64,000 bases of DNA from IMGVR_UViG_3300026292_000003:157644-221643; one strand, 5' to 3'; shown: positions 19,017 to 48,528, counted from the stretch's first letter. Translations and numbers: made by a program. The notes: generated from the sequence alone by a model not told the origin.

Positions 19017-19020
19017 AAAT

Positions 19021-23338: not shown

Positions 23339-23368
23339 ATAAATACTTGTAGATACAGGAGAACATAC

Positions 23369-23740: not shown

Positions 23741-23750
23741 GAGATAAACT

Positions 23751-30962: not shown

Positions 30963-30965
30963 TAA

Positions 30966-31085: not shown

Positions 31086-31282
31086 TGGATATTGATAGAC
31101 TAAAAGTATTAGCAGGTGTAAATAAATCTGTTGCTGAATCTCCTGAAGGATCTAACATAAGTATTATTGGATCTGAAAAAGCAAAAATTCAAAGAGAACG
31201 TAAAATTAAACCAGGAACAGACGAATGGTTTAAATTGTGGTTTTCAAGACCACATCTTACTGGTGAAAAACCAACAAAATAG
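31085..31282 (+). CDS. Putative internal head protein
   Basis: MDIDRLKVLAGV leader; IKPGTDEWFKLWFSRP. Confidence 0.65.
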   Translation: MDIDRLKVLAGVNKSVAESPEGSNISIIGSEKAKIQRERKIKPGTDEWFKLWFSRPHLTGEKPTK

Positions 31283-31293
31283 GAGAACGCATA

Positions 31294-31680
31294 ATGGGTA
31301 CGGCAACCCTTTTACTTTTTGTACTAATGTGCAAACACGCGATTTGCGACTTGGCACTACAGTCATTTAGAACACCAACAGACAAATATAAGTATTTCAA
31401 TAAAGGTTTACATATACATTCATTAGATCACGGAATAGGTGCGTTCATTGTACTACTATTCTTTATAAACCCATTGTACGCCGCTCTATTTGCGTTTATT
31501 GACTATATTTTCCATTGGCATATTGACTTTATTAAAACAAATATTACTCGAAAATTTGGCTGGACAAAAGATGGTAAGGCTTTTTGGCGTCTACAAACAT
31601 TTGATCAAATTGCTCACTATGCAACGTATGCTCTAATAGTGTATTTGATATTTAAATGCCCTTTATGCATAATTAGATAA
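31294..31680 (+). CDS. DUF3307-like membrane protein
   Basis: KHAICDLALQ, HSLDHG, HWHIDFIK, DQIAH. Confidence 0.75.
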   Translation: MGTATLLLFVLMCKHAICDLALQSFRTPTDKYKYFNKGLHIHSLDHGIGAFIVLLFFINPLYAALFAFIDYIFHWHIDFIKTNITRKFGWTKDGKAFWRLQTFDQIAHYATYALIVYLIFKCPLCIIR

Positions 31681-31688
31681 ATACAGTT

Positions 31689-34916: not shown

Positions 34917-34945
34917 TTGACTTTTTTCAATATATTAGTTATAAT
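34917..34945 (+). promoter_or_regulatory. sigma70-type promoter; ATG 5 nt after -10 (leaderless)
   Basis: TTGACT-N17-TATAAT-AAGCC-ATG. Confidence 0.7.
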
Positions 34946-34950
34946 AAGCC

Positions 34951-36129
34951 ATGCCAGAAAAATACTGCATATACACGAATAATTTCACCTTTGTAGACAA
35001 TGATGGCTATGTTGCGTTATGTTGTAAGAACTTAAAAAACAAACTAACACAATATCATATCAAAGATTACAAATTAAGCGAAATATGGAATAGCCCAGAA
35101 ATGCATTCCGTAAGGCAAGAAATTGCCAGCGGAGGAGAACCTATGGGTTGTTTTAAATGTTATGATCCAGAACGTGATGGTGTACGTAGTTTTAGACAAA
35201 AAGCATTAGGTATGATTAACAAAGGTGTACCCTTTGAAGATGAAAAAATACACGCATTAGATTTAAGACTAGGTAATGTATGCAACTTAAGATGTGTAAT
35301 GTGTTTCGCTGGTAATAGTAACAAAATTTTAAAAGATCATAAGCAAATGGCAGACCATTTTAAATGGAAAGAAGGTCGCCTAGAAAAAGAAGCAGAAAAG
35401 TATCACAAAAGCAATTATGACTGGAGTGATGATGAAAGAGCCTGGGAAAACATTATTACCAGTGTAGATAAAAATTTAAAACACGTTTACCTAGCAGGTG
35501 GTGAACCATTTTACTTAAAAAACTTTCCAACAACTGTAGAACGTTTAGGTACACTAGCACCAGATGCTAGATTTGTTATTAACTCAAACGGTACAAGACT
35601 ATTAAGAGAAAAAGATCTAAAACAACTGAAAAAGGTTGAGAATGTATTCATTAGATTTAGTGTTGACGGTTGGGGTGGTGCAGATGAATGGATTAGACAA
35701 GATACAAAATGGGAAGAAAAACTACAAGTAATGGATCAATATTACAAACACTTTAAATTAAGAGTTTGGGATATTACTGCAAATAGTTTAGGTGTTAGAC
35801 AAATACCAAAGCTAATAGAATATCTTTGGGAGCATTATCCTGAAGCAAAAGTACAAATTAGACCCGTAGTTAATAAGACAGAAATATTAATGGAAAATAT
35901 TCCTGATAGACTAAAAGCAAAGCCTTTGGAATTCTTTGAGAAACACAAAAATAAACTTGAAGGTGTTGATCATGTAATTAACGAGATGCGTAAACCATTC
36001 AATCCAGATCCTAACAGAGCAAAAACAGTTAAGCATTGGGTTGATTACTACGATAATACCGGCGTAGTAAAACTAGGTGACTTTGATCCAGAGCTTTCAG
36101 ATTGGATTCAAAGTAATGGGCAACAATAA
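34951..36129 (+). CDS. Radical SAM/twitch protein
   Basis: CNLRCVMC, AGGEP; N-terminal YC..LCC..CFKC. Confidence 0.9.
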   Translation: MPEKYCIYTNNFTFVDNDGYVALCCKNLKNKLTQYHIKDYKLSEIWNSPEMHSVRQEIASGGEPMGCFKCYDPERDGVRSFRQKALGMINKGVPFEDEKIHALDLRLGNVCNLRCVMCFAGNSNKILKDHKQMADHFKWKEGRLEKEAEKYHKSNYDWSDDERAWENIITSVDKNLKHVYLAGGEPFYLKNFPTTVERLGTLAPDARFVINSNGTRLLREKDLKQLKKVENVFIRFSVDGWGGADEWIRQDTKWEEKLQVMDQYYKHFKLRVWDITANSLGVRQIPKLIEYLWEHYPEAKVQIRPVVNKTEILMENIPDRLKAKPLEFFEKHKNKLEGVDHVINEMRKPFNPDPNRAKTVKHWVDYYDNTGVVKLGDFDPELSDWIQSNGQQ

Positions 36130-37333
36130 TTTTTGTAGTATACCTTGGATACATTCAGCAACTAAAACAAATGGTGCTAGTAGAGTATGTTGTTTGATGA
36201 GCAACTACGAACAAGGTAATGGCGGTCAAACAGGACATAACTTCAAAACAGATACTATAGAAGAAATACACAATAGCGAATATACTCGTAATCTTCGTAA
36301 GAAGTTTTTAAAGGGTTATAAACCAATTGAATGTAATACGTGTTGGGTTAAAGAGAAGAATGGTGGACAAAGTAGACGTATGTTTACTAATAAAATGTAC
36401 AAGCATTTAATTGACTATGAGAAAGCATTAAAGATCACAAAAGAAGATGGCAGTACAGATCAAATGCCAGTATATTGGGATTTACGTTTTGGTAACTTAT
36501 GTAATCTAAAGTGTGTTATGTGTGGACCACAAAGTAGCAGTATGTGGTATAAAGATTGGGCTCATATGTATGATACGGATCATTTTGAAGATTCAGGAGA
36601 AAAAATATTTTTTAAAGATAAAGGGGTTGACAGTAACGTATACGATTGGTATACAAGTAGCAACTTCTGGGAGCAAATGGAAAAGAATATAGATCAGCTA
36701 GAACATATATACCTAGTTGGTGGCGAGCCTATGCTTATTGAACAACATTATATATTTTTACAAAAGCTAATAGATAAAGGCGTAAGTCAAAATGTTACAT
36801 TGGAATATGATACAAATATTACTAACGTACACCAACGTGCTATTGAGCAATGGAGTAAGTTTAAAACATTAATGTTAAGAGTAAGTATAGATGATTATGG
36901 AGAACAAAATGATTATATACGTTTTCCTAGCAAATGGTATAAGTTAGATGAGAACATTAAACGTATTAAAGAATTAGTACCAAATACAAAAGTTGAAATA
37001 AGTATAACTTGGCAAATGCTTAATGCATATACATTTTTAAATTTAGTAGAGCATTTTAAAGATTACTTTATTAATATTAGAATATTGTCTGCACCAGAGA
37101 TATTTGATCCAAAACACTTACCAAAACAGGCTAAATTAGAGCTTATTGATATGTACAATAGTTCTGTACATAAAGATAAACTAAAGCATCTAATAAGCTA
37201 TCTAACAAATAACTTAAATAATAATAGATTATTATACCAAGAATCAGCAGATTTTCTAAATAGGCTAGATGTATTAAGAGGTACAGATTGGCCCAAAACG
37301 TTCAAGCAACTGCATAAATCGATAAATATATAA
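36116..37333 (+). CDS. Radical SAM/twitch protein
   Basis: CNLKCVMC, GGEP; FCSIPW..VCC..CNTC. Confidence 0.9.
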   Translation: MGNNNFCSIPWIHSATKTNGASRVCCLMSNYEQGNGGQTGHNFKTDTIEEIHNSEYTRNLRKKFLKGYKPIECNTCWVKEKNGGQSRRMFTNKMYKHLIDYEKALKITKEDGSTDQMPVYWDLRFGNLCNLKCVMCGPQSSSMWYKDWAHMYDTDHFEDSGEKIFFKDKGVDSNVYDWYTSSNFWEQMEKNIDQLEHIYLVGGEPMLIEQHYIFLQKLIDKGVSQNVTLEYDTNITNVHQRAIEQWSKFKTLMLRVSIDDYGEQNDYIRFPSKWYKLDENIKRIKELVPNTKVEISITWQMLNAYTFLNLVEHFKDYFINIRILSAPEIFDPKHLPKQAKLELIDMYNSSVHKDKLKHLISYLTNNLNNNRLLYQESADFLNRLDVLRGTDWPKTFKQLHKSINI

Positions 37334-37346
37334 AAGGAGCATACTT

Positions 37347-37799
37347 ATGAAAGTTAATGAAATAGTAACAGAACAAGGTGTTATAGTCAAAGGCGTAAAC
37401 ACAACAGTCGATGTTCAACCTGGTGAAACAGAGCGTCAGGCGGCTAAACTATTCCCAATGAATAAAGGTGGGAAACCAGCATCATTAATTAATGATAAAG
37501 TTCGTAAGAATAGCAATCCACACGTTCTTTTTAATATGGGCTTAACTGAAGAGCAAATACTACTATTAGAAAAAGTAGTTAAGCAATCAAAGCCTATGAA
37601 AGTATTAATGAACCTAGCAAGTAGAAATGATAATAATCCATTTCCAGTAAAAATGGGTGATATTATAGTTAATGTTACACCCGATACTGCTAGAAGAGTT
37701 ATACACCATTATTTTAATTCAAGTGATTTTAGACAAAACGAAATTGAGAAGATGTTAAATGATGCAATGGGATTTAAAAAACTTGTAAAGGAGATTTAA
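37347..37799 (+). CDS. Putative internal head protein
   Basis: GATAAATA, AAGGAG; MKVNEIVTE leader; GVNTTVDV. Confidence 0.65.
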   Translation: MKVNEIVTEQGVIVKGVNTTVDVQPGETERQAAKLFPMNKGGKPASLINDKVRKNSNPHVLFNMGLTEEQILLLEKVVKQSKPMKVLMNLASRNDNNPFPVKMGDIIVNVTPDTARRVIHHYFNSSDFRQNEIEKMLNDAMGFKKLVKEI

Positions 37800-37985
37800 A
37801 TGGACAAAAAGGAAATGTATACCGAGTATGGGTATAGAGGTACTGTTGAATTACAATTAGAAAAAGACCGTAACAAGAAATTAGTAGAAGATAACAAAAA
37901 GCTAGTTGAAGATAATAAAAAACTAATAGAAGCTAATGAGAAATTAATTGAGGACTTAAGAAAGGCTGAAGAGAAATTAATATGA
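37800..37985 (+). CDS. Small coiled-coil protein with NKKLVED heptad repeats
   Basis: AAGGAG SD; four heptad repeats. Confidence 0.6.
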   Translation: MDKKEMYTEYGYRGTVELQLEKDRNKKLVEDNKKLVEDNKKLIEANEKLIEDLRKAEEKLI

Positions 37986-38281
37986 GAATAAATGAAATTA
38001 TTACTAAAGAATTTGCTCCAACAAAAACAGCAAAGCAAGTGGCACACAATGCCCAAGCTGATGCCGCATTCTGGAAAAGCAAACTTGCACCTACTCCATT
38101 AAATAAAGATACAATGGTAATTACTGGTCCTAATGCACAAAACAAGATTGATAATAAAATTGCAAAAGCTAACAGTTTAAGTAAGGCGGCAAATGTAAAC
38201 CCTAATGCATTTACTAACAATTTACAAAAATCTTTTAGTAATAATACATCAAAATTTAAAACTAAATTTGGAAGATCATAA
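37982..38281 (+). CDS. Basic Asn/Lys-rich putative internal protein
   Basis: MRINEIITKE leader; no Glu afterwards. Confidence 0.65.
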   Translation: MRINEIITKEFAPTKTAKQVAHNAQADAAFWKSKLAPTPLNKDTMVITGPNAQNKIDNKIAKANSLSKAANVNPNAFTNNLQKSFSNNTSKFKTKFGRS

Positions 38282-38628
38282 TGAAAATAAGTGAAATTGT
38301 AACAAAGAAAACAGGTGCAGGTACAGTAAAAACTGTAGGTGGAAATGAGATTTCTAGAAGCACTCCTAATATAGGTGGACTACAAACAACTCAATATGCA
38401 GATGGATCTATCAAAAGTACATTCAATACTAACATAGGTGGAACATCTACAAATTTTACAAAAGTAAATGGAATTAATACTAACACAAATATGGCTTCTG
38501 GTAACCTTGCACTTAAAACAACAAACACTGGTAACAATAAATTTAAATTAAATAAAGCCACGTATAATATGGGCGGTGGACAAGGTACCCTAGTAGCACA
38601 GCCAGGTAAGTGGTCAGTAAGGAAGTAG
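38281..38628 (+). CDS. Basic Thr/Asn/Gly-rich putative internal protein
   Basis: MKISEIVTK leader. Confidence 0.65.
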   Translation: MKISEIVTKKTGAGTVKTVGGNEISRSTPNIGGLQTTQYADGSIKSTFNTNIGGTSTNFTKVNGINTNTNMASGNLALKTTNTGNNKFKLNKATYNMGGGQGTLVAQPGKWSVRK

Positions 38629-38630
38629 TT

Positions 38631-39005
38631 ATGAGAATAAATGAAATTACAAAAGAAGGATTTGACGACGCAGGGCAAAAAATTTACAAAGGTAATACAA
38701 CTCGTGTTGTTCATACACCAGTAGCAGATAAAAATATTAGTGTAGCAACCCAACGTATTAATAAATTTGCTAGTGATAGAGCCAGAGATGATCTAACTTA
38801 TAAAGGTGCTAAAATAACTGTACCAGGAACTAATCAAGCTATTGCTAAAGCTAAGAGTAATACAGTTACAGCATACAACAAGCAAGATAAAATAGATCAA
38901 AGATCAGGTGCAGGAACTTCTTACATTACTAAAGGCAAGCCAATTAAGTTTGGTAACAATGATAATGTTAAACTTAATATGTTCAGTAGTAAGGACAAAG
39001 AATGA
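38631..39005 (+). CDS. Basic putative internal protein
   Basis: MRINEITKE leader; AAGGA SD. Confidence 0.65.
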   Translation: MRINEITKEGFDDAGQKIYKGNTTRVVHTPVADKNISVATQRINKFASDRARDDLTYKGAKITVPGTNQAIAKAKSNTVTAYNKQDKIDQRSGAGTSYITKGKPIKFGNNDNVKLNMFSSKDKE

Positions 39006-39886
39006 AAATTAATCAAATCATAAATGAAGCAGTAGATTCAAAAGCTGAAATATATGTTGATATGGATGGCGTATTAGCAGACTTTTTTGGCGTATGGACT
39101 AAAATGGTTGGCGTTAAGAATTGGAAAGAAGTTAAAGACGTTGACTCTGCATTAGATATGATTAGAAGTCAAAAAGATTTTTGGATTAATTTACCACTTA
39201 CACCCAATGCCTCAAAGTTATTAAATTCAATTAAAAAAGTAAAAGGAAACTATACTATATTAAGTTCTCCTTTACCAGATGATCCAAATTCAGAACCACA
39301 AAAACGTGAATGGGTTAAAAAGATGCTTTCAGGTTTTGCACCTAAAAGAGTTATTATAACGCATAATAAAAGTGCGTATGCAAAACAACCTGATGGAACT
39401 CCTAATGTATTAATTGACGACTATGGAGATAATATTCAAAAATGGGAAAACGCAGGTGGAATAGGAATACAACACTCAGATAAAAATGCAGATGCAACAG
39501 TTTCAAAATTAGAAGAAGCTGATTTTGTTCATGCAATAAGCAGATTTATGAATAGAAATATACGTCCTGGTTTCTATAAAAGAGCCGCAAAAAAGTTTCA
39601 TGAATGGTTAAAAGGTCAAGCACCTTACAGACATAGCCTAGGATATTATGCTATGGAATGGGGTCATCAGTATAAACATATAGATTGGAGAAATCTAAAA
39701 CAAGCATATGAAGTTATGTTTGGAGATGATGTATTAGTAGAAGGCAAAGAACCTAAACTTGTAAAAGATAAAAAACAAAAGAATTTAAGCAGTATGGATA
39801 AACCTACAAAGTATGAAAGACGTAAAAATTATACTAAAGCTGATGAAGGTGAAGAGCCAAAACAAAAAAAAGAAAAGAAAAAATGA
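39002..39886 (+). CDS. HAD 5'(3')-deoxyribonucleotidase-like protein with leader and basic tail
   Basis: MKINQIINE; YVDMDGVLADF, ILSS, LIDD, WENAGGIGI. Confidence 0.85.
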   Translation: MKINQIINEAVDSKAEIYVDMDGVLADFFGVWTKMVGVKNWKEVKDVDSALDMIRSQKDFWINLPLTPNASKLLNSIKKVKGNYTILSSPLPDDPNSEPQKREWVKKMLSGFAPKRVIITHNKSAYAKQPDGTPNVLIDDYGDNIQKWENAGGIGIQHSDKNADATVSKLEEADFVHAISRFMNRNIRPGFYKRAAKKFHEWLKGQAPYRHSLGYYAMEWGHQYKHIDWRNLKQAYEVMFGDDVLVEGKEPKLVKDKKQKNLSSMDKPTKYERRKNYTKADEGEEPKQKKEKKK

Positions 39887-40077
39887 AAATAAAAGATGTA
39901 TTACAACTTCCAGCAATCAATATTGGTGATGAAGTCTATGTAGGTAGATTTAAAAATCGTAAAGCTACAGTAACAGGCTTTGGAGTTGATAATCATAATC
40001 AGCCTATATTAAAAACAAACAAGGGCGAACACAAGTTATTCAAGCCTAGAATAGCAAAATTAATGAAAGAAGAGTAG
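39883..40077 (+). CDS. Small SH3/KOW-like protein
   Basis: MKIKDV; INIGDEVYVGRFKN. Confidence 0.6.
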   Translation: MKIKDVLQLPAINIGDEVYVGRFKNRKATVTGFGVDNHNQPILKTNKGEHKLFKPRIAKLMKEE

Positions 40078-40088
40078 AGTTCAACTCT

Positions 40089-40469
40089 ATGAGAGTATCC
40101 TTAAAAAGACTACAACCCAATGATGCATTTCATTTAAGACGCATACTTGACAAAGATACTGCTCTTAAATGTTATTTAACATGGCCGTTTACAAAAGAGG
40201 TTGCAAAAACTTTCATTTCAGACTATAATACATATGGAATATGGATTAATAATGGAATATTAGTAGGAGCCATAGAAGTTAAAGAGTCATTGGAAACAGC
40301 ATATTTTGTTTCACCTACATATAGAAACAAAGGTATAGCTACAAAGGCTGTAACAGAGTGTAAAGATTTATTTGGAAAAAAACAACTATGGTGTGTTATT
40401 AATCCAAAAAATAAGGCAAGTTTGAAGGTAGCTGAAAAATCAAAATTACGAGTAAATTTTGTCAGCTAA
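40089..40469 (+). CDS. GNAT (RimJ/RimL-like) acetyltransferase
   Basis: YRNKGIATKA, NKASLKVAEK. Confidence 0.8.
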   Translation: MRVSLKRLQPNDAFHLRRILDKDTALKCYLTWPFTKEVAKTFISDYNTYGIWINNGILVGAIEVKESLETAYFVSPTYRNKGIATKAVTECKDLFGKKQLWCVINPKNKASLKVAEKSKLRVNFVS

Positions 40470-40478
40470 ATATCTTAT

Positions 40479-40715
40479 ATGTCTAATAAGAAGTTTAATA
40501 AAGACCTTATTAAAGATAACCATGGTCCAATGAATAGTGTCTCGAAAGACGACGCACTAGTCTGGGCAGGTGCTCCGCCAGTAAAGAATTTAAGTAACTT
40601 GGAGCCAAGAATTAGAAGAGAAGTATTAGCTAAAAAAAAGAAAGCTGAAACTAGTTCTAAAAAAGCTGATAGAAATATTAGCAAACAAATTAAAAGAAAG
40701 TATGAAGAGGAATAG
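40479..40715 (+). CDS. Basic hypothetical protein
   Basis: 78 aa; GCTAAATA upstream. Confidence 0.6.
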   Translation: MSNKKFNKDLIKDNHGPMNSVSKDDALVWAGAPPVKNLSNLEPRIRREVLAKKKKAETSSKKADRNISKQIKRKYEEE

Positions 40716-40717
40716 AT

Positions 40718-41479
40718 ATGGATTATAGTAAAGTTGATAAAGACGGAAAAGAGCTTAACACAGTTCCAAAAGCTAATCAAGCAAAACAAGCTGGTTACTA
40801 TGATAGATGGATTGAAAGTGGAAAGACTTGGGGAGAACCTACACCTGAAGATATCAAATGTGAATTACAACTAGATGCCTTATGTGACTTTGAACCACTT
40901 AAATGGGAAATTGATTTAGGTTGGTTTAAAAAAGAAATTAAAGCATATGATGGCAAATGGGTACCATATCTTCGTAGAGAAGGTGTTGTAAATAATAGAG
41001 AAGGATTATGTTTAGTAGGATTACCAGGTGATGAACCTTGGGATAGTTTAAGTATGCCAGAAGCAAGAAGACGTACTGGTAGAAAGTTAAGTGAATTAGA
41101 TTTTAACGAACCAACACAACTATACAAAGACTTAAAAAGTTTACATCCATTATTAGATTATTGGAAGCCTTTGGGACGTACGATGATAGTAAATTCTGGT
41201 GCAGGTGGCTGGTTTCCACCACATAAAGATCAACCTTTATTAACCAGAGATACGTTTAGAGTATGTGCATTTATATCAAACAACGTAACGCATGATGCGT
41301 ATGAATGGCATATGGACGGTCGTGTATGGCCTATTAAAGCAGGTGGAGTATATTATATTAATACTAAAAAGACGCACAGAACTCATGCCTGGAAAGATAA
41401 TAGTTTACATTTAGTAATGAATATACCTAAAACTTGGGAAAATGTACTCAAGCTAATGAGTGCAACCCTCAATTACTAG
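40718..41479 (+). CDS. 2OG-Fe(II) oxygenase (Asp/Asn beta-hydroxylase-like)
   Basis: GGWFPPHKD...YYINTKKTH; HxD...H triad. Confidence 0.75.
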   Translation: MDYSKVDKDGKELNTVPKANQAKQAGYYDRWIESGKTWGEPTPEDIKCELQLDALCDFEPLKWEIDLGWFKKEIKAYDGKWVPYLRREGVVNNREGLCLVGLPGDEPWDSLSMPEARRRTGRKLSELDFNEPTQLYKDLKSLHPLLDYWKPLGRTMIVNSGAGGWFPPHKDQPLLTRDTFRVCAFISNNVTHDAYEWHMDGRVWPIKAGGVYYINTKKTHRTHAWKDNSLHLVMNIPKTWENVLKLMSATLNY

Positions 41480-41510
41480 TGTATATTAAACAAATTAGAT
41501 AAATACTTGT

Positions 41511-42005
41511 ATGAAAGTATTTGATATCATAAACGAAGATGCTGACGGTGGAAGTTCAATGGCAGGTAACTTTGCTAGTGTTAGTTTTCCTTTGTTTGGC
41601 AAAAAGAAGCAGATTAGACGTGCAGTTGATCCTAAAGGATATTTAGGTGATGGCAAACTCAAGCTACCCAAAGTAGGTTATAACAAACCTGTTAAAGTAG
41701 ATAACGTAGCTGAGTCTGTAAACGAGAAGGTATACAAAAAGAACCCAGATGATCCTATGGATCCAGAAGTTCATGTGCCGGGTATGGCAGTATACAGTCT
41801 TAAAGGTCTTGAAAGAGATGTAAAAGGTATGTTTGAAGATTTAGCAAAACAAGCAGGTGATGGTAATTGGGAAAACATAGATTATTACTTACATCAGCAC
41901 GGAGTTTTATCAGCTAAAGTAAAAGCGATAGCAAGTACATATGAAGATTTAGAAAATACGAGAAAACGTGGAGGCAGAGCTTCTCAAGGTATTATAAAAA
42001 GGTAA
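41511..42005 (+). CDS. Putative internal head protein
   Basis: MKVFDIINE leader; internal AESVNE. Confidence 0.65.
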   Translation: MKVFDIINEDADGGSSMAGNFASVSFPLFGKKKQIRRAVDPKGYLGDGKLKLPKVGYNKPVKVDNVAESVNEKVYKKNPDDPMDPEVHVPGMAVYSLKGLERDVKGMFEDLAKQAGDGNWENIDYYLHQHGVLSAKVKAIASTYEDLENTRKRGGRASQGIIKR

Positions 42006-42010
42006 CGACA

Positions 42011-42802
42011 ATGACACCAAATGAACAAAAAATTGACAACACTTTTAATAGAGTGATGGACGATATAAACAGATTACAAAAAGCATTCCAACCAGGAAAA
42101 AATTTAGAAAAAGCTATCGCAGAAGTCGGTGGTGATATAGGTTGGTTAACAGAAATTAATAAATCTTTTGATGACTTATATGAATCATTAGAAGAAGGAC
42201 ATATGGGAGCAATAGCTCATTTACAAATGGAAGAATCAGCAAAAAAAGAAGTTAAAGAAAGTGTATTAGACTCTGCAGATGATGATGGGTTTATGGCACG
42301 TTCACAACTATACTTCCTAGCACGTGATGCAATTAATTTGCACGGCATGATTGATGATAGATCAGATTTAGAACCATGGGTTCAAAGTAAAATATCTCAA
42401 GCTTCAAAAGACATTGATGCAGTACGTCGTTATACTGAGTACAATGCAATGGAGCAAGAACAAGAACCAGAAGTACCAGCAGTAATACCAGGAGAAGAAC
42501 CACAAGAAGAAATGCCAACAATAGACGTACAAATGCCAGCAGGAGAATCAGTAGTAGAAGAAAAAGATCCTGAAACAGATTTCACAAGATGGTTAAAAGA
42601 CAAATACAATAAATCAGTGAGAGATCTAAAAGGTGATGAGTATACTAAAATGTCTAAAGAGTTTCAAGCATCTAAGAAAAAAGATGAAAGCATTAATGAA
42701 GAAATGAAATTTGATGACAAAAGAGATGCAGACCTAAAAGTCTTTGCAAAAGATTTGTATAAGAAGGCTGTTAAAAAAGCTAGAAGCAAAGCAAACAAAT
42801 AG
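42011..42802 (+). CDS. Putative internal head/core polyprotein
   Basis: MARSQL...LEPWVQSKIS module; multiple ESxxE linkers. Confidence 0.6.
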   Translation: MTPNEQKIDNTFNRVMDDINRLQKAFQPGKNLEKAIAEVGGDIGWLTEINKSFDDLYESLEEGHMGAIAHLQMEESAKKEVKESVLDSADDDGFMARSQLYFLARDAINLHGMIDDRSDLEPWVQSKISQASKDIDAVRRYTEYNAMEQEQEPEVPAVIPGEEPQEEMPTIDVQMPAGESVVEEKDPETDFTRWLKDKYNKSVRDLKGDEYTKMSKEFQASKKKDESINEEMKFDDKRDADLKVFAKDLYKKAVKKARSKANK

Positions 42803-42811
42803 GAGCATATC

Positions 42812-45637
42812 ATGAGAATACTAGACTTAGGCGAAGCTGGTTACGAAGGACAATCAGAAGCACAAAAACATTATTTTTATATTGAAGGCGATTACGATCA
42901 AGATCGTGGAATAAGTGAAAAAGATTGTGAAGAGATTACAAAACAACTTGTTGATATGGGATTAAAAGCTCATTGTCAACCAGATGAGTCTAGACAAGGT
43001 GTTGTAGAAATTAACACTTACAGTGGTCATACAACTATAGCAGATGCACTAGCTAAAGCTGGATACGAAGCTGATGCAGTTGGCGACTATGCAGGTTTTA
43101 CTTTTCATGAAGGTGAAGCAAATATTATAGCAGAAAATCCAAAAAAATTTACAAAAGCAGACTTTGACGCAAACGAAGACAAAAACTATCACACAGAAAA
43201 CGGTGTTGAATTAGCTAAAGCATTTGGTACTCCAGAAGAGATTGAGCAAATGGAACAAATTGCAAAAAATCATTATACTCGTGGACATATACTATCACAT
43301 GAAATAGATGCTCGTAGTGAAATTGTTGGAAAATATCTTCCATCATTAGAATCACAAGAAGAAGCAATGAGTAAAATGACTGAAGGCGATTTACAACCAG
43401 GTGATATAGAATTACTAAAACCAATGGTTGATATGAAACCAGAAGTATTAAAAGTTTATGCAAGAAATATTATAAAGAAATATCCACACCTTAAAGATAA
43501 CGTTATGAGAATGTTACCTGAATCACAAGAAGAAGATTTTATTGTTACATACAACGGAACACAAAAAGCAAATGATGCAGATTCTGCATTAGATATTTTA
43601 CAAGATAATGGATATGATGTAGAACGTGACTTTGATGGTACGTTTAAAGTATCTTATGAAGGTGTACAAAAAGCAGATAATATATATGACGTATTAGATT
43701 TATTACGTGATGAAGGTTATGAAGTACAAATTGCTGAACGTAAACTTTCTAAAGGTGAAGAAGATAAAAAAGAAGATATTGTAAAAGGCATGAAAAAAGA
43801 TAAAGACGGATTCAAAGAAAGATATGGCAAAGATGCAGAAGCAGTAATGTATGCGACAGCAACTAAATTAGCCAAAGAAGAAAATATAGTTGAAGACGAT
43901 GAACAAGCACTTGCACGTCAATTAATGCGTAAAGATGGAATTGATCCAGATAAAGTAAGTGACGGTGGAGTATTTTCCAAGTATCGTGAAAAGGCAAAGA
44001 AACAACTATCAGAAGATTTTATGGACGACAGAAAATATCAGAGCTTAGAAGAATTAAGAGACAAGTTAGTAGATATTGAAAAACATATTAAACGTTTAGG
44101 CGTTATGGACGGTGCCACAGAGTGGGAAGGTAAACACCTAACAGGTACAGCCGATATACACGACCAACTTACTACTATGTATAAAGATATTGCAGGACTA
44201 CAAGGTGCAGTAGGTAGAGCATTAAAAATAGTACCTGCAGAACAAAATCCATCTACAAAAGAATTTAAAAAGAAATATGGAATGGGCGAAGCAGACTCAA
44301 TGGGAATGAACAAGTATGGACTTGCGGCGGCAAAGAAAAATGGCAAGTTTATCTCATATAGAAATGGTAAAAAAACAGGTGAGTTTGATTCTATGGAAGA
44401 ACTTTCAAAACACCAACTTGATTTAATTAAAGATGAATCAGTAGAAGTAAAAGAAGGTGTAAATGATGTAGATAAAATTCATCAACTTACAGATGAGCTT
44501 TATAGAGAATTAGTTGATTTCCAAAACGAAGAGTTTGATGAAAACATTGAAGAGCTTATTGGACACCTAGCAGAATTCAAAGCTAAACTTGAAGGTGATA
44601 CAGGATCATTTTCAGAAGATACTATTAAAGAAGCATATATCAATAATACAAAAGATGCTATTGACATTTTAGGACGGCTACGAGGCAAAGGTAAGCAGTT
44701 AGAAAGAGGCCAACAAGAATACAAAGGTAACCTACCAAATGAGTACGTTAATGATGTATGGGACGTATGGACTTGGATGGAAAGTAAACTTGGTGGTGGA
44801 GCAGAAGCAAATGATCCAAAACTTAAAGCAATTATGCAAGAAGTATTTTGGCTCAGAGGCGAAGCTAAAAAAATGGAAAGAAATTACAGTCCAGATCTAG
44901 AGCGTTCAGAAGATCATATGGGAGCGGCAGGTTTTGGAAATATGGTAGTGAATACTTTATATCCATTAATGCAATGGCTAGATATGAATGATAGTAAGTT
45001 AAACGAATTTGATATTAAAAAATCATTTAATAATATTGCTAACAACGTTAAAAACACTATGTCAAATGTTGTTAAAGGAAATCCATTAAGAACTAAAATG
45101 AATAAAAATGCAAATAAAAATGGACCAAGTTTAGCAAGACAGATTAATTGGGGTGGAAAGTATGAGTCAAAAGATGATATAAACGAACTTGATACATTTG
45201 CACCAAAAACAGATTACATAAAAGGTCCAGGTGGCGAGTTTTATAAAATTGAATATCGTAACAATAGTGGACTAACAGGTAAACGTAAAGATGATACGGC
45301 TAGATTCGTTTCAGTGAATCCTGCAAGTGATCAAGAAGTATCTGCATTAAATTTAGATGATATGATTGCTAAAGGTAATACAAGTATTCATCAAGGACAC
45401 GATCATCAAGGTGGATTACCTTGGAGTGATAAAGACATTGCTGTTTATGCATATGGCGGCGATGATTATGAAGAAGGAATTCCTAACAATGCAAAAATGA
45501 AATTAATTAAAGTAATGACTACAGAAGCTGAAAAGAAAAGGAAAGCAGAGCTAGGCACGAAAATACGTTCGTGGAGAGAAACAAAAGCTGACATGAAGAA
45601 GAAAATTGAAGCTTCTAAACCAGGAGATAAAAAATGA
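42812..45637 (+). CDS. Large acidic modular putative internal polyprotein
   Basis: MRILDLGE leader; modules separated by xxE linkers; RYG...VMYATATK module. Confidence 0.65.
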   Translation: MRILDLGEAGYEGQSEAQKHYFYIEGDYDQDRGISEKDCEEITKQLVDMGLKAHCQPDESRQGVVEINTYSGHTTIADALAKAGYEADAVGDYAGFTFHEGEANIIAENPKKFTKADFDANEDKNYHTENGVELAKAFGTPEEIEQMEQIAKNHYTRGHILSHEIDARSEIVGKYLPSLESQEEAMSKMTEGDLQPGDIELLKPMVDMKPEVLKVYARNIIKKYPHLKDNVMRMLPESQEEDFIVTYNGTQKANDADSALDILQDNGYDVERDFDGTFKVSYEGVQKADNIYDVLDLLRDEGYEVQIAERKLSKGEEDKKEDIVKGMKKDKDGFKERYGKDAEAVMYATATKLAKEENIVEDDEQALARQLMRKDGIDPDKVSDGGVFSKYREKAKKQLSEDFMDDRKYQSLEELRDKLVDIEKHIKRLGVMDGATEWEGKHLTGTADIHDQLTTMYKDIAGLQGAVGRALKIVPAEQNPSTKEFKKKYGMGEADSMGMNKYGLAAAKKNGKFISYRNGKKTGEFDSMEELSKHQLDLIKDESVEVKEGVNDVDKIHQLTDELYRELVDFQNEEFDENIEELIGHLAEFKAKLEGDTGSFSEDTIKEAYINNTKDAIDILGRLRGKGKQLERGQQEYKGNLPNEYVNDVWDVWTWMESKLGGGAEANDPKLKAIMQEVFWLRGEAKKMERNYSPDLERSEDHMGAAGFGNMVVNTLYPLMQWLDMNDSKLNEFDIKKSFNNIANNVKNTMSNVVKGNPLRTKMNKNANKNGPSLARQINWGGKYESKDDINELDTFAPKTDYIKGPGGEFYKIEYRNNSGLTGKRKDDTARFVSVNPASDQEVSALNLDDMIAKGNTSIHQGHDHQGGLPWSDKDIAVYAYGGDDYEEGIPNNAKMKLIKVMTTEAEKKRKAELGTKIRSWRETKADMKKKIEASKPGDKK

Positions 45638-45885
45638 TATTTAATTGGATTAAAAACATATTAGGTGTTGGTGAAAAGCCTTTGGTTTTAACTGACGAAG
45701 TAGAGCCAAAGAAAAATGAGATTAAACCTATTATCGTAAAACCTTCATTTAAAACTAAAAAAGATTTGTCAAGTATGACAAAAGGTAGACTTGAAGAAGT
45801 TGGTAGAATCTATGGTATAGAATTAGATAAAAGATTAACTAAAGCTAAACTAGTAGATCAACTTTGGAAACAGTTAAAGAAATAA
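45634..45885 (+). CDS. Small protein with Rho-N/HeH-like C-terminal motif
   Basis: LSSMTKGRLEEVGRIYGIELDKRLTKAKLVDQL. Confidence 0.6.
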   Translation: MIFNWIKNILGVGEKPLVLTDEVEPKKNEIKPIIVKPSFKTKKDLSSMTKGRLEEVGRIYGIELDKRLTKAKLVDQLWKQLKK

Positions 45886-46077
45886 ATGATGGCTGAATTC
45901 GTTAGAAAGCCAGCAGAGCATACTAACGGACATTGCCAAAATTGTGGACATCCTAGCCATTGTGGTGGAAGTCTACAACAAGAAGTAAGAGATTATGCTT
46001 GTGATAGTAAAGATAATAATAACACACGTATGATTGAAGTCTGTAAATGTTGCAGATGTAAAAACTGTACTAAATAG
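45886..46077 (+). CDS. Cys/His-rich Zn-binding small protein
   Basis: CQNCGHPSHC...CKCCRCKNC. Confidence 0.65.
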   Translation: MMAEFVRKPAEHTNGHCQNCGHPSHCGGSLQQEVRDYACDSKDNNNTRMIEVCKCCRCKNCTK

Positions 46078-46093
46078 TACAAAGGACTAAATT

Positions 46094-46237
46094 ATGAAGT
46101 TACATAAAGGTTTTGTAGAACACGAAACTACGCCGAAGAAGACAAGCATTGGGAACAATAAATCCAGACATAAAACTTCTTCTATGAATAAGCATAAGAG
46201 GCGTTCATACAAGCCGTATAGAGGACAAGGAAAATGA
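46094..46237 (+). CDS. Basic 47-aa phage peptide ending YRGQGK
   Basis: AAGGA SD; ATGA overlap with next gene; missed by track. Confidence 0.7.
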   Translation: MKLHKGFVEHETTPKKTSIGNNKSRHKTSSMNKHKRRSYKPYRGQGK

Positions 46238-47436
46238 GACTAGATCAACTATTTAAAGAAAATGATACTACAGTAAAAACTATGTCTATGCCTGAGAAGG
46301 TAGCAGTATTTGATAGATTACAACCAGGTCAAGAAATTGGCTTATGGTTTGATTCAGTTATTAGAAGAGCTGACAAGTATAAACCCTTTGTAGTTGGTAG
46401 AAAAACAAGATCAAAATTACGTCCTTTAGAAAAAATTACACTATTACAAAAAAGCAAAGATGGTGGAACAGGTGGTATGAAATACTACCTATATAAGAGA
46501 AATGGTGACAATGTTAGTTTAGCAATGGGCGATATGGCCGCAAGTCTAGTAGACATTAAAGAAGCTAAAGCATATGACATAAACGAAGCTGATACAACTA
46601 TAATGGAAAGAATAGTACTAGATATAGACTATAGTAGAAATCCAGAAGCATTACTTAAAGCAGTTAATACAATGGGTAAAAGATTAGACCTTACATTAAT
46701 GAATGCACCACAAGCAATTAAAGATTTAAAAGAAAAAGGCTTTGCTAGAATAGAAGGTAAAGATGCAGACATTATGTCATTTGTAAATTATCTATATTCA
46801 AAAGGTATTGAGCCAAACTACGATATTCAAAATATGGATAAAGTACAAACACCAGGTTTAAATGCTAATCCAAATATGCCTGCATTTATAGGCAAGAAAG
46901 AAGTACCAGTTGAAGAAGGTATTCCATTATCCACAATGTACGGACTTGTTATTGATGGCAAGTATGTTGCTAAAGGCTCAAAAGAAAAAATGAGAAAAAT
47001 GCAAAAAGAAAAAGGTGGTACAGTTTATAATGCTCCTGGCAAAAAAGTAGGAGACAGTGAAGGTAAAGTTAAAGAAGGACATTCTAATACTAGACAGCAA
47101 TCTCAAACTATGTTAAAACTAGAAGAGTTAAGAGATATGATTATGGTACTAGATATGAATGATGATTCAAAAACATCAGCACTTACAGCATTAGATCAAG
47201 TAGCTGATGATATAACAGTTCTTGAATCAAAAGATGGAGCTAATAGTTCTACATATGGTGGACCCAGAGCGGCACAGATATATTTAAAAACTATAGACGA
47301 CTATGCTATGATGCTTAAAGGCAAAGATGGCGATGTAGAAGAAATAGGATATAGAATTCAAAATGCGGCAGATGATTTAAGAAAACATCTAAAACTTGAT
47401 CCTACTAATTTAAGAACAGCATTTAACGAAAAGTAA
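46234..47436 (+). CDS. Putative internal head polyprotein
   Basis: MRLDQLFKE leader; DIKE/DINE/VEE/VKE linkers. Confidence 0.65.
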   Translation: MRLDQLFKENDTTVKTMSMPEKVAVFDRLQPGQEIGLWFDSVIRRADKYKPFVVGRKTRSKLRPLEKITLLQKSKDGGTGGMKYYLYKRNGDNVSLAMGDMAASLVDIKEAKAYDINEADTTIMERIVLDIDYSRNPEALLKAVNTMGKRLDLTLMNAPQAIKDLKEKGFARIEGKDADIMSFVNYLYSKGIEPNYDIQNMDKVQTPGLNANPNMPAFIGKKEVPVEEGIPLSTMYGLVIDGKYVAKGSKEKMRKMQKEKGGTVYNAPGKKVGDSEGKVKEGHSNTRQQSQTMLKLEELRDMIMVLDMNDDSKTSALTALDQVADDITVLESKDGANSSTYGGPRAAQIYLKTIDDYAMMLKGKDGDVEEIGYRIQNAADDLRKHLKLDPTNLRTAFNEK

Positions 47437-47448
47437 TAGGAGAGAATA

Positions 47449-48528
47449 ATGAGATTACATGATTTATTTTTATTAAAAGAATACGATGATTTAGAACAAG
47501 AAAAACAAGGTATTATCTCTGCTATATCTGGACTTCGTGCTGACAACGAAGAAGATGCTAAACTATTAGATAGAATTTATAAAGTATTAAACACAGGCCA
47601 AATTGGTCAAAATATTTCAAATGCTTTCACAGTACCATTAGAAGGTGAACCATTAAGTGATAAAGAAAAAGCTCTAGTAGTACAAGACATGACTACTATT
47701 ATTTCTCAATCAGATAATGATTTTAAATCACTTTCAGGTATGACAGAAATGTTAGAAAAAGGTGGCGTTGTTGATGTTGGAGCATTAGATTCTCCACTAA
47801 CTACATTCAGCAATGTATTTCAACACCCAGCGGCAGTTAAAGTATTTCATGCATTAAAGAATTATGGAACTGGTAAAAAACAAAAAGGCCCAGGCGAATA
47901 TGCTTTGGCTTGTTTAACTAATAAAATTAGATTAGCGGCAGGTGAAGGTGACATTGAAGTTGATGGCATTGGAAAAGTAGAATTAAAATCAGCAGTATCT
48001 AGCACAGGTGGACGTATAGGTTACGGTGGTGGATCACAAAAAGCTAAAAGAGCAGTACTAGACAAATACGCAGAAAGAATTCCAACAGTTATGGGTGCTA
48101 TTGGTGGTAAAGGTGGTTCGTTGGGATTAAGTAAATTTGTTCCAGCATTAGCACAAGACTTACCACTTAATGATGCAGACAGTAAGAAATTAAGAGAACA
48201 GATTGCAAGTGAACTATTAACAATGGATATGGAAAACTTTGCACAACCAATTATAAAAGCATTTGGTAGTACAGACAATGTAGAACAAATTGAAGACGAA
48301 TATTTAAAAGCAAACTTTGCATGGTACAAAGATAGAGATGATTTTGATGCCCTATTACTATGTAGTTTCCCGAATGAAAAATTTGCTATGATTAAAAATG
48401 ATAGTGATTTAATAGCCTTTAGAAGAGGCGGACAAGCTAACTCAACAAGTATAAGTATTATTCCTACACAAGCTGGTGCAGGAAGAGAACAATGGGCTCA
48501 GCTAACTCTAAATAAGGCTAAGGTATAA
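47449..48528 (+). CDS. PD-(D/E)xK nuclease-like protein with targeting leader
   Basis: MRLHDLFLLKE; KGPGE...GDIEVDG...VELK. Confidence 0.6.
   Translation: MRLHDLFLLKEYDDLEQEKQGIISAISGLRADNEEDAKLLDRIYKVLNTGQIGQNISNAFTVPLEGEPLSDKEKALVVQDMTTIISQSDNDFKSLSGMTEMLEKGGVVDVGALDSPLTTFSNVFQHPAAVKVFHALKNYGTGKKQKGPGEYALACLTNKIRLAAGEGDIEVDGIGKVELKSAVSSTGGRIGYGGGSQKAKRAVLDKYAERIPTVMGAIGGKGGSLGLSKFVPALAQDLPLNDADSKKLREQIASELLTMDMENFAQPIIKAFGSTDNVEQIEDEYLKANFAWYKDRDDFDALLLCSFPNEKFAMIKNDSDLIAFRRGGQANSTSISIIPTQAGAGREQWAQLTLNKAKV

What the first reader, a model, noticed from the sequence alone, without database searches (positions are those of the whole stretch)
47449..48528. PD-(D/E)xK nuclease with capsid-targeting-like leader: candidate injected 'reverse restriction' enzyme
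Seen: this ORF has the same leader as the cargo cluster (MRLHDLFLLKE), followed by a restriction-endonuclease-like core (GPGE...GDIEVDG...VELK). No methyltransferase gene is adjacent. Inference: the phage may package a site-specific nuclease and inject it to cut host or competing DNA, protecting itself by lacking the site rather than by methylation. The GCWGC purge is a natural candidate for that site. The link is a hypothesis; host RM avoidance explains the purge equally well.
Basis: inference. Interest (0 to 1): 0.75.

Follow-up and report, generated by a model that had tools for sequence, protein, structure and literature searches.

The report
Leader-tagged restriction-like nuclease of a marine phage
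This gene of an uncultured marine jumbo phage encodes a new restriction-enzyme-like nuclease with a short T4-style "pack me into the head" leader, so it is probably injected with the DNA, but comparison with relatives shows no link to the genome's total lack of GCWGC sites.

Summary
Window 47449-48528 (+) is a real, conserved 359-aa gene. It has an 11-residue leader (MRLHDLFLLKE|Y) and a nuclease core whose only invariant residues across a deep family alignment include E150, D168, E178 and K180, the PD-(D/E)xK signature. AlphaFold models place these residues on the canonical helix and strands. The best structural neighbours are type II restriction enzymes (HhaI, MspI, HinP1I), but the scores are weak.

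The boundary [L/I/V]-x-E|Y is conserved in stand-alone genes. It is also conserved where the module is the C-terminal part of 700-2300-aa proteins. The phage encodes a T4-type prohead protease. The same leader marks 12 clustered genes. Packaging and cleavage are therefore well supported by inference, but not shown.

GCWGC is truly absent (0 in 221,643 bp, about 115-220 expected) and no methyltransferase was found. The proposed link fails the comparative test:
- A relative with a 76%-identical nuclease has 167 GCWGC sites and no purged short site.
- Modules 88-92% identical sit in genomes with different purges.
- The purge changes at least 7 times on the nuclease tree.
- This genome also lacks RCATGY entirely.

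Host restriction avoidance explains the purges better. The nuclease's target is unknown.

The parts
47438..47442 (+). Ribosome-binding site AGGAG, 6 nt before the ATG. The gene follows the upstream leader-bearing 400-aa gene after a 12-nt gap, so it looks like the same operon.
   Evidence: Read directly from the sequence.
47449..47481 (+). Leader peptide MRLHDLFLLKE (residues 1-11). It resembles a capsid-targeting sequence and ends in L-K-E. Cleavage by the prohead protease is predicted between E11 (47479-81) and Y12 (47482-84).
   Evidence: The boundary [L/I/V]-x-E|Y is conserved. In about 120 non-redundant stand-alone members P3 is L or I in 111, P1 is E in 110 and P1' is Y in 111. In 40 fused members the figures are 40, 39 and 38. 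AF2 gives pLDDT below 50 for residues 1-15, i.e. disordered. The T4 CTS is MKTYQEFIAE (PMC8442874).
47482..47829 (+). N-terminal all-helical domain of the mature module (residues 12-127). It is always present with the core, in fused forms too. Its function is unknown.
   Evidence: AF2 helices at 15-26, 34-47, 49-59, 71-88 and 92-103 with pLDDT 55-90. Matches in fused proteins begin at query residue 8-9.
47830..48525 (+). PD-(D/E)xK nuclease core (residues 128-359).
   Evidence: The domain model has pLDDT 94.3 and pTM 0.90. The top VIA-align hits are HhaI Z 4.9, MspI 4.8, HinP1I 4.4, NhoI 4.4, Eco15I-N 4.0, NaeI 3.6 and Hjc 3.5.
47896..47898 (+). E150, the invariant glutamate at the start of the core helix (motif KGPGE).
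   Evidence: Invariant in A2. Helix 150-155 in the model. Codon checked.
47950..47952 (+). D168, the invariant aspartate (motif GEGD) immediately before strand 169-171.
47980..47988 (+). E178-L-K180, the invariant ExK inside strand 175-182.
   Evidence: It is retained in all 14 divergent variants found in the same slot of relatives.
29727..47436 (+). Upstream block of 11 further genes that start with the same kind of leader (M[RK][ILV]x[EDQ][ILV]). Their starts are 29727, 31689, 37347, 37982, 38281, 38631, 39002, 39883, 41511, 42812 and 46234. Radical SAM/SPASM, GNAT and other genes are interspersed. The nuclease is the last gene of this block.
   Evidence: Pfam content.

Best explanation
The gene encodes the founding example, in this window, of an unannotated family of PD-(D/E)xK (restriction-endonuclease-fold) nucleases found almost only in viruses. 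The family occurs in uncultured marine T4-related jumbo myophages. The protein is made with an 11-residue N-terminal leader. By analogy with the T4 internal proteins, the leader takes it into the prohead core, and the phage's T4-type (S77) prohead protease removes it by cutting after E11 in L-K-E|Y. The mature enzyme (residues 12-359: a helical domain plus the nuclease core) would then sit in the filled head and enter the cell with the DNA. There it would cut nucleic acid of the host or of rival elements. Shown here: the conserved catalytic signature and its fold context, the conserved cleavage-type boundary, the protease gene, the leader cluster, and rapid replacement of the cargo behind a constant leader. 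Inferred, not shown: packaging, cleavage, ejection, nuclease activity and the substrate. The complete absence of GCWGC (and of RCATGY) from this genome is most likely avoidance of host restriction enzymes and independent of this gene.
For: Nuclease:
- E150, D168, E178 and K180 are invariant in 36 sequences reaching down to about 25% identity, and in 14 further variants.
- The models place E150 at the start of a helix, D168 before a strand and ExK within the next strand.
- In a domain-only search of 48,161 PDB representatives the top 7 hits are all PD-(D/E)xK nucleases (HhaI, MspI, HinP1I, NhoI, Eco15I-N, NaeI, Hjc). Hjc, ThaI, PvuII, SwaI, NlaIV, I-Ssp6803I and DpnI follow.
- The two top Swiss-Prot Foldseek hits are BsuFI and BsuRI.
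- The nearest named ESM-Atlas clusters are HinP1I, SmaI, Eco47II and Bsp6I.

Leader and packaging:
- The [LIV]xE|Y boundary is conserved in stand-alone and fused members.
- Distant members start MRAxEF[LI]xE, close to the T4 CTS MKTYQEFIAE.
- T4 head proteins are targeted by a CTS and cut after Glu, for example Alt at ITE-6 and LTE-619 (PMC5694885; PMC3012670).
- G000 encodes a Peptidase_S77 prohead protease (E 6e-26) within a T4-like head module. A 64-aa gene bearing the leader lies between the portal and protease genes.
- The leader is enriched about 28-fold and clustered.
- In phages with 84-88% identical DNA polymerase, the same slot holds family members only 25-78% identical that keep the leader MRLxxLFE. 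The T-even internal-protein loci show the same pattern (PMC3012670).

Purge is independent of the gene. Methyltransferases predicted to recognise GCWGC/GCNGC are widespread in bacteria (PMC11347163).
Against: - No structural match is individually significant. The best Z is 4.9 and the best Foldseek E-value is 0.17; the tool notes say Z under 8 can be a common arrangement.
- There is no Pfam, PHROG, NCBIfam, PADLOC or PDB sequence hit.
- No cultured phage carries a homologue, so no virion proteome can be consulted.
- The protease-leader complex prediction gave no answer.
- A mature nuclease lying in the head with the DNA needs some form of self-protection. Relatives such as G006 lack any purged 4-6-mer and no methylase was found, so how self-cutting is avoided is unexplained.
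- The gene lies in the replication-side part of the genome, next to DNA polymerase, about 150 kb from the head module.
- The T4 late-promoter consensus is not used here.
Confidence: 0.55

Rival explanations
1. The packaged enzyme is a site-specific endonuclease that cuts GCWGC (or another purged site, such as RCATGY) in host or competitor DNA. The phage protects itself by having removed every copy of that site.
For: - GCWGC and RCATGY are each completely absent from 221.6 kb.
- No DNA methyltransferase was found.
- A nuclease stored with the DNA needs self-protection, and lack of the site is a simple way to get it.
- The weak structural neighbours cut short GC-rich palindromes: HhaI and HinP1I cut GCGC, MspI and BsuFI cut CCGG, and NhoI and Bsp6I cut GCNGC.
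- The immediate clade of the query (92-100% identical, L002-L006, plus L020 at 75%) is uniformly GCWGC-free.
Against: - G006 has a 76%-identical nuclease, an 87%-identical polymerase and 123 kb alignable to G000. It carries 167 GCWGC and 226 RCATGY sites, and no 4-6-mer is absent from it.
- 39 of 79 carrier loci purge nothing.
- Modules 88-92% identical go with a CGCG purge, a CATG purge or none.
- The GCWGC purge needs at least 7 changes on the nuclease tree. It occurs with variants 25-38% identical.
- It also occurs in polymerase relatives with no family member in the locus or record: L110-L113 and L115 have 0 sites against 9-14 expected. Those records are only 5-12% complete.
- One gene cannot explain two full purges plus strong depletion of GCGC and GCTAGC.
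Confidence: 0.08
2. The protein is a nuclease but is not packaged. It would be an intracellular phage enzyme for host-DNA breakdown, recombination, repair or homing. The conserved N-terminus would then be a translation-start or regulatory feature, not a targeting and cleavage signal.
For: - The gene lies among replication and repair genes (DNA polymerase 3.4 kb downstream, UvdE, PhoH), far from the head module.
- Several genes with the leader have enzyme domains not obviously needed in a virion, such as the NT5C nucleotidase at 39002.
- No proteomic evidence exists.
Against: - The same [LIV]xE|Y boundary is kept where the module is internal to 700-2300-aa proteins. A translation-start explanation cannot apply there.
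- The leader is conserved while the cargo diverges to 25% identity.
- The leader resembles the T4 CTS, and an S77 protease is present.
- A small gene with the same leader lies between the portal and protease genes.
Confidence: 0.2
3. The protein is a packaged nuclease whose discrimination is by DNA modification or structure, not by a short sequence. It might cut unmodified host DNA while phage DNA carries a modified base (the T4 EndoII/EndoIV logic). Or it might cut branched or single-stranded nucleic acid, so packaged duplex DNA is not a substrate.
For: - This would explain how carriers with no purged site and no methylase avoid self-cutting.
- PD-(D/E)xK neighbours include modification-dependent enzymes (NhoI, Eco15I, DpnI) and Holliday-junction resolvases.
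- The window is rich in radical SAM enzymes and has a 5'-nucleotidase, which could serve nucleotide modification. That last step is speculative.
Against: No recognised DNA-modification pathway was identified in the window. Nothing in the sequence indicates a modification reader domain. This is a refinement of the best explanation, not a contradiction of it.
Confidence: 0.15

Closest known systems
T4 internal proteins IPI/IPII/IPIII and Alt (CTS-directed, gp21-processed, ejected head proteins)
   Same: - A short N-terminal leader ends in (L/I)xE and is followed by the mature protein.
- The phage has a T4-type S77 prohead protease.
- The leader is constant while the cargo behind it is hypervariable between close relatives.
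- Several such genes are clustered.
   Different: The cargo is a restriction-fold nuclease, not a small basic protein, a GmrSD inhibitor or an ADP-ribosyltransferase. In relatives the same module is released from giant multi-module proteins. Packaging is not demonstrated here.
Type IIP restriction endonucleases of the MspI/HinP1I/HhaI structural group (PD-(D/E)xK)
   Same: The catalytic signature is E..D..ExK on a helix-strand-strand-strand core. These enzymes are the best structural neighbours (139-147 aligned residues). The domain size is similar.
   Different: - There is no detectable sequence similarity, and Z is only 4.4-4.9.
- There is no partner methyltransferase.
- The family is essentially absent from 185,579 prokaryotic genomes (1 hit, on a MAG contig).
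- It has an extra N-terminal helical domain and a leader.
- The specificity is unknown.
Polyvalent proteins of phages and conjugative elements (Iyer et al. 2017, PMC5512222)
   Same: Relatives carry the module at the C-terminus of 700-2300-aa multi-module proteins, one of them with an Amidoligase_2 domain. This is consistent with virion-delivered effector arrays.
   Different: The window's gene is stand-alone. Release seems to rely on prohead-protease sites ([LIV]xE, often in tandem), not on an embedded autoprotease. The other modules have no matches to known families.
Virion-associated restriction endonucleases of chloroviruses (from my own knowledge: Agarkova et al. 2006)
   Same: A restriction-type nuclease is carried in the particle and used on host DNA at the start of infection.
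   Different: The chlorovirus enzymes belong to R-M pairs, and methylation protects the viral DNA. Here no methylase was found, and the delivery route would be a T4-type head.

Membership tests
PD-(D/E)xK nuclease superfamily | Catalytic motif: an acidic residue on the core helix, then (P)D, then (D/E)xK, all conserved | tested here: met
   E150, D168, E178 and K180 are invariant in A2 (36 sequences, down to about 25% identity). They are also kept in 14 divergent slot variants.
PD-(D/E)xK nuclease superfamily | Core topology of a helix followed by three strands, with D at the start of the second strand and ExK in the third | tested here: met
   The AF2 models give helix 150-155, strands 160-162, 169-171 and 175-182, then helices and two further strands. 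The domain model has pLDDT 94. This is a predicted structure, not a solved one.
PD-(D/E)xK nuclease superfamily | Significant structural similarity to solved members | tested here: inconclusive
   The top 7 of 48,161 PDB representatives are all members (HhaI Z 4.9 down to Hjc 3.5). But every Z is below 5 and the Foldseek E-values are 0.17 or higher. The support comes from enrichment, not from any single score.
PD-(D/E)xK nuclease superfamily | Metal-dependent phosphodiester cleavage | not testable with these tools
   Needs enzyme assays.
Type II restriction-modification system | Cognate DNA methyltransferase encoded next to the endonuclease | tested here: not met
   No methylase domain was found in neighbours, in the 221.6-kb record, in five large carrier records for C5 methylases, or beside the single genome hit.
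Type II restriction-modification system | Resident in prokaryotic chromosomes or plasmids as a defence gene | tested here: not met
   There is 1 hit in 185,579 species genomes, on a 24-kb MAG contig. The Atlas clusters are 100% viruses. PADLOC gives no hit.
Type II restriction-modification system | Cleavage at a fixed short recognition sequence | not testable with these tools
   Indirect evidence only: many carriers lack any purged 4-6-mer.
T4-type CTS-bearing internal head proteins | N-terminal leader of about 10 residues, ending in (L/I)xE and similar to the CTS | tested here: met
   The query has MRLHDLFLLKE|Y. The family consensus is MRxxxLxE|Y or MRAxEF[LI]xE|Y, against MKTYQEFIAE in T4.
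T4-type CTS-bearing internal head proteins | Phage encodes a gp21-type (S77) prohead protease that cuts after Glu | tested here: met
   PF03420 matches at G000:52933-53361 with E 6e-26, above the cut-off. The cleavage specificity of this particular protease is inferred from T4.
T4-type CTS-bearing internal head proteins | Constant leader on cargo that varies between related phages | tested here: met
   In phages with 84-88% identical polymerase, the slot variants are 25-78% identical and all start MRLxxLFE or MKLHHLFE.
T4-type CTS-bearing internal head proteins | Protein present in the mature head in processed form and ejected | not testable with these tools
   No cultured relative exists. The complex prediction gave no answer.
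BisI/NhoI family (GCNGC, modification-dependent) | Sequence or clear structural membership, with a QxK variant of the motif | tested here: not met
   The match to NhoI is only Z 4.4 over 99 residues. The motif here is ExK, whereas NhoI has QVK and Eco15I has QIK (PMC11347163). There is no sequence hit.

The most novel reading that the evidence does not exclude
Marine T4-related jumbo phages load their heads with a rapidly diversifying arsenal of effector modules. These are made either as separate leader-tagged genes or as giant polyproteins that the prohead protease cuts at [LIV]xE. One widespread module is a restriction-type endonuclease fired into the cell with the DNA as a first strike against host or rival DNA. 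In this phage its site could even be one of the two sequences the genome has eliminated.
Probability: 0.4. Interest if true: 0.8.

Novelty: new variant of a known kind. Interest (0 to 1): 0.6.

Why it matters
If the protein is packaged and active, it would be the first natural restriction-fold nuclease delivered through a T4-type head. Until now this has been done only by engineering, when staphylococcal nuclease was fused to the T4 CTS. It would show that the CTS-plus-protease system known from T-even phages is used far more widely, and with much larger and more varied cargo, in abundant uncultured ocean phages. It would include polyproteins processed at the same sites.

The family has at least 158 clusters at 50% identity and no annotation in Pfam, PHROGs, NCBIfam or PADLOC, so a name and a testable function are useful for annotating marine viromes.

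The negative result also matters. Complete loss of short palindromes (GCWGC, RCATGY, CATG, GTAC, AGCT, CGCG) is common and labile in these phages and tracks something other than this gene, most likely host restriction systems. That pattern can help host assignment.

Tried and rejected
- **Sequence family searches.** Pfam, PHROGs, NCBIfam, PADLOC, PDB sequences and a PDB profile search all gave nothing.
- **Foldseek on the whole model.** PDB gave only noise and AFDB clusters gave only two uncharacterised relatives. Cutting out the core domain was needed before the restriction enzymes rose to the top.
- **tblastn against GenBank phages.** Four diverse family members were searched against 50,697 GenBank phages with no match, so no virion proteome or annotation could be borrowed.
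- **Polyprotein relatives.** I tested whether they are fusions of the window's upstream genes. They are not. Only a short module of the 941-aa gene (phrog_12788) is shared.
- **Complex prediction.** The prohead protease with residues 1-30 scored 0.00 with the verdict "no answer". It is not used as evidence.
- **T4 late promoter.** TATAAATA is not upstream and is under-represented in the window (4 against 14.9 expected). The sigma-70-like and terminator scans were no better than shuffles.
- **Whole-record GCWGC counts.** I fetched three whole records and counted in Python instead.
- **Family-wide GCWGC specificity.** I considered that the whole family cuts GCWGC, with unpurged carriers protected by C5 methylation. 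No C5 methylase is in five large carrier records. The records are incomplete, so the idea is weakened, not excluded.
- **A caution on sensitivity.** tblastn with the single query missed divergent family members in the polymerase-linked slot. An HMM found them (against 66), so the earlier "no nuclease" calls were corrected.

Full report
**What is there**

Window 47449-48528 (+) is an ATG-started ORF of 359 codons. An AGGAG ribosome-binding site lies 6 nt upstream. The start is 12 nt after the stop of a 400-aa gene on the same strand. The window is the last 64 kb of a 221,643-bp IMG/VR virus record, G000, with 33.6% G+C and a CheckV completeness estimate of 60%. The record's DNA polymerase is 44-48% identical to those of jumbo myophages such as Sinorhizobium phage Phosso, Agrobacterium phage Atu_ph07, Vibrio phage 2.275.O and Cronobacter phage GAP32. 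The record holds one copy of the gene.

**The gene is real and widespread but unannotated**

The big protein collection holds 135 relatives. The 50%-identity library holds 158 cluster representatives. Their sources are environmental metagenome collections, Tara among them. In contrast there is no hit in Pfam, PHROGs, NCBIfam, PADLOC, PDB sequences or a PDB profile search. There is no hit in 50,697 GenBank phages with four diverse queries. There is a single hit in 185,579 prokaryotic species genomes, on a 24-kb MAG contig without a methylase. ESM-Atlas clusters of the family are 100% viral.

**Nuclease core**

I aligned 36 members reaching down to about 25% identity. The only invariant residues are G147, E150, G167, D168, E178, K180, G188 and Y293. 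These include the full E...(G)D...ExK signature of PD-(D/E)xK nucleases.

- The AlphaFold model of the whole protein has pLDDT 83. The model of residues 128-359 has pLDDT 94.3 and pTM 0.90.
- Both put E150 at the start of a short helix, D168 just before the next-but-one strand, and E178-x-K180 inside the following strand. That is the canonical arrangement.
- Foldseek finds nothing significant.
- A full structural scan of 48,161 PDB representatives with the core domain puts HhaI (Z 4.9, 139 residues), MspI (4.8), HinP1I (4.4), NhoI (4.4), Eco15I-N (4.0), NaeI (3.6) and Hjc (3.5) in the first seven places. More restriction enzymes and resolvases follow.
- The two best Swiss-Prot models are the restriction enzymes BsuFI and BsuRI.
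- The nearest named ESM-Atlas clusters are HinP1I, SmaI, Eco47II and Bsp6I.

Each score alone is weak, and the tools warn that Z under 8 may be a common arrangement. The agreement of independent methods, together with the invariant catalytic residues, makes a PD-(D/E)xK nuclease the clear reading. Activity itself is not shown.

**The leader**

Residues 1-11 (MRLHDLFLLKE) are disordered in the model.

- Most close homologues have MRLRNLFE|Y or MRYKDLVE|Y. Distant ones have MRAxEF[LI]xE|Y. That is very like the T4 capsid-targeting sequence MKTYQEFIAE (PMC8442874).
- Many relatives carry the module as the C-terminal part of proteins of 700-2300 aa. There the module again begins at the same Tyr and is preceded by ...KLLNE|Y...SVINE|Y...NKLNE|Y or ...ESLKE|Y.
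- Over non-redundant junctions, P3 is L or I in 111 of about 120 stand-alone members and L, I or V in 40 of 40 fused ones. P1 is Glu in 110 and 39. P1' is Tyr in 111 and 38.
- A second [LIV]-[NS]-E site often lies 5 residues upstream in the fused forms.

In T4, all internal head proteins reach the prohead core through a CTS. The gp21 protease cuts after Glu, for example Alt at ITE-6 and LTE-619 (PMC5694885; PMC3012670).

G000 encodes a Peptidase_S77 prohead protease (E 6e-26). It lies in a T4-like order of portal, small leader-bearing ORF, acidic protein, protease, scaffold-like protein and capsid-like protein. Only the protease is assigned from a domain match. The portal, scaffold and capsid labels are inferred from gene order, size and N-terminal sequence.

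The N-terminal pattern M[RK][ILVF]x[EDQ][ILVF] starts 15 of 268 genes, against 0.54 expected (maximum 4 in 1000 shuffles). Twelve of the 15 lie in window 29727-48528, and one lies between the portal and protease genes.

In phages whose DNA polymerase is 84-88% identical to this one, the same slot about 4 kb upstream of the polymerase gene holds family members only 25-78% identical. All of them start MRLxxLFE (or MKLHHLFE) and keep E..GD..VE[VL]K. A constant leader on fast-changing cargo is the hallmark of the T-even internal-protein loci (PMC3012670). A translation-start artefact cannot explain the internal junctions.

Packaging and cleavage are therefore a well-supported inference, but no experiment or proteome backs them. 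The complex prediction of the protease with the leader gave no answer.

**The GCWGC question**

The purge is real: 0 sites in 221,643 bp, against 115 expected from composition and 220 from a Markov model. No C5, N4/N6 or Dam methylase is present in the record. RCATGY is also absent (0 against 167 or 32 expected). GCTAGC (1 site) and GCGC (27 against 113-174) are strongly depleted.

All 80 IMG/VR loci examined carry a family member. Among them:

- GCWGC is absent from 25 loci and near expectation in about 40.
- Other loci instead lack CATG (0 against 40-70 expected), GTAC, AGCT, CGCG or ACGT.
- Roughly half lack nothing.
- Modules 88-92% identical sit in genomes with different purges: L027 (CGCG) against L032 (CATG) at 90%, and L025 against L052 (none) at 92.5%.
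- The closest pair of GCWGC-free and GCWGC-normal loci is 79% identical.
- On a maximum-likelihood tree of the module, the GCWGC label needs 8 changes, and well-supported branches force at least 7.

Whole records make the same point.

| Record | Nuclease identity to query | GCWGC sites (expected) | RCATGY sites | Notes |
|---|---|---|---|---|
| G000 (221.6 kb) | query | 0 (115) | 0 | also GCTAGC 1, GCGC 27 |
| G006 (204,772 bp) | 76% | 167 (114) | 226 | polymerase 87% identical; 123 kb aligns to G000; no 4-6-mer absent |
| G001 (183.8 kb) | about 25% | 14 (95) | 132 | variant sits in the same slot |
| G007 (202.9 kb) | 63% | 426 (187) | 274 | no purge |

Polymerase relatives L110-L113 and L115 have 0 GCWGC (9-14 expected). 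They have no family member in the locus or the record. Those records are only 5-12% complete, so genome-wide absence is not proven. No C5 methylase is in five large carrier records.

So the gene's presence does not predict the purge. Near-identical enzymes go with different purges, and the same purge goes with very different enzymes. One gene cannot account for two complete purges. Methyltransferases predicted to recognise GCWGC or GCNGC are widespread in bacteria (PMC11347163). From my own knowledge, complete loss of host restriction sites is a known phage strategy; Staphylococcus phage K lacks GATC, for example. Host restriction avoidance is the better explanation. I put the GCWGC or RCATGY link for this particular enzyme at under 10%.

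**What remains open**

The substrate is unknown. It is also unknown how a mature nuclease stored beside the DNA avoids cutting it in carriers with no purged site. Possible answers are a longer or asymmetric site, dependence on DNA modification or structure, or lack of accessible metal ions in the head. The N-terminal helical domain (residues 12-127) has no informative match. The weak structural neighbours that cut GCGC, CCGG or GCNGC are not evidence for specificity.

**Verdict**

This is a new, unannotated virus-only family of restriction-fold nucleases attached to a T4-type head-targeting and cleavage signal. I class it as a new variant of known kinds (CTS-bearing internal proteins, polyvalent ejected proteins, PD-(D/E)xK nucleases).

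Noticed in passing
whole record G000 (window = G000:157644-221643): Besides GCWGC, RCATGY (ACATGT, GCATGC, ACATGC/GCATGT) is completely absent: 0 sites against 167 expected from composition and 32 from a Markov model. GCTAGC occurs once, GCGC 27 times (113-174 expected) and CATG at 0.4 of expectation. GCSGC is over-represented (319 against 58-197).
   Followed up: partly
loci L021-L081 (IMG/VR relatives): Related phages show other complete purges of 4-bp palindromes. CATG is 0 against 40-70 expected in L032, L034, L035, L039, L040 and L068. GTAC is purged in L021, L022 and L069-L071. AGCT is purged together with GCWGC in L024, L026, L037, L079 and L080. CGCG is purged in L025 and L027, and ACGT in L057. 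The pattern changes between close relatives.
   Followed up: partly
window 29727-48528 (+): Twelve genes in a 19-kb block start with M[RK][ILV]x[EDQ][ILV], for example MRINEVDRE (1075 aa), MRINEIITKE, MKVNEIVTE, MKINQIINE (an NT5C nucleotidase domain), MKVFDIINE, MRILDLGE (941 aa) and MRLDQLFKE (400 aa). Most have no known domain. They look like a head-cargo cluster.
   Followed up: partly
window 12295-14785, 27163-28071, 34951-37333, 50673-51926: There are six radical SAM genes in 64 kb. Three of them (34951, 36077, 50673) have a SPASM domain at the N-terminus, ahead of the radical SAM domain. Two lie inside the leader-bearing gene block. Their substrates are unknown.
   Followed up: no
window 45886-46237: A 63-aa Cys-rich ORF (several CxxC pairs, zinc-ribbon-like) is followed by a 47-aa extremely basic ORF (MKLHKGF...KHKRRSYKPYRGQGK) that overlaps the start of the 400-aa leader-bearing gene.
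   Followed up: no
G000:49936-55787 (outside the window): A head module in T4 order. Only the S77 protease (212 aa) is identified by a domain match. The other labels are guessed from order, size and N-terminus: a portal-like gene (556 aa), a 64-aa ORF starting MRFNELAQ (where T4 has gp67/gp68), an acidic 306-aa protein, a 367-aa scaffold-like protein and a 387-aa capsid-like protein whose N-terminus holds LxE/VxE sites (…SYLSE|S).
   Followed up: partly
P0121-P0130, P0144-P0148; loci L024, L036, L046, L078-L081: Relatives encode single ORFs of 1300-2300 aa that end in the nuclease module. One has an Amidoligase_2 domain (P0125). Most of their length matches no family. A short module (phrog_12788) is shared with the window's 941-aa gene. 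Tandem [LIV]xE sites precede the nuclease module.
   Followed up: partly
window 16926-25757: This region holds host-like stress and chaperone genes: PhoH, a DnaJ-like protein (225 aa) and a ClpB/ClpA-like double AAA+ protein (753 aa). Elsewhere the window has UvdE (28335), a class-3 lipase (2380, minus strand), a cyanophage outer-membrane-protein-like beta-barrel (5023) and a ring-hydroxylating oxygenase alpha-subunit domain (5626).
   Followed up: no
window, both strands: The T4 late-promoter consensus TATAAATA is under-represented: 4 matches against 14.9 ± 3.7 in shuffles. None lies near the leader-bearing genes, so late transcription signals must differ from those of T4.
   Followed up: no
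L154 (CAYMPA010000032.1, MAG labelled uncultured Enterobacteriaceae): This is the only prokaryotic-genome hit for the family. It is a 24-kb contig with ClpX, Hsp20, an AAA_28 protein and a flagellin-like gene around a stand-alone member that starts MRAHEFLRE|Y. It may be a phage contig binned into a MAG.
   Followed up: partly
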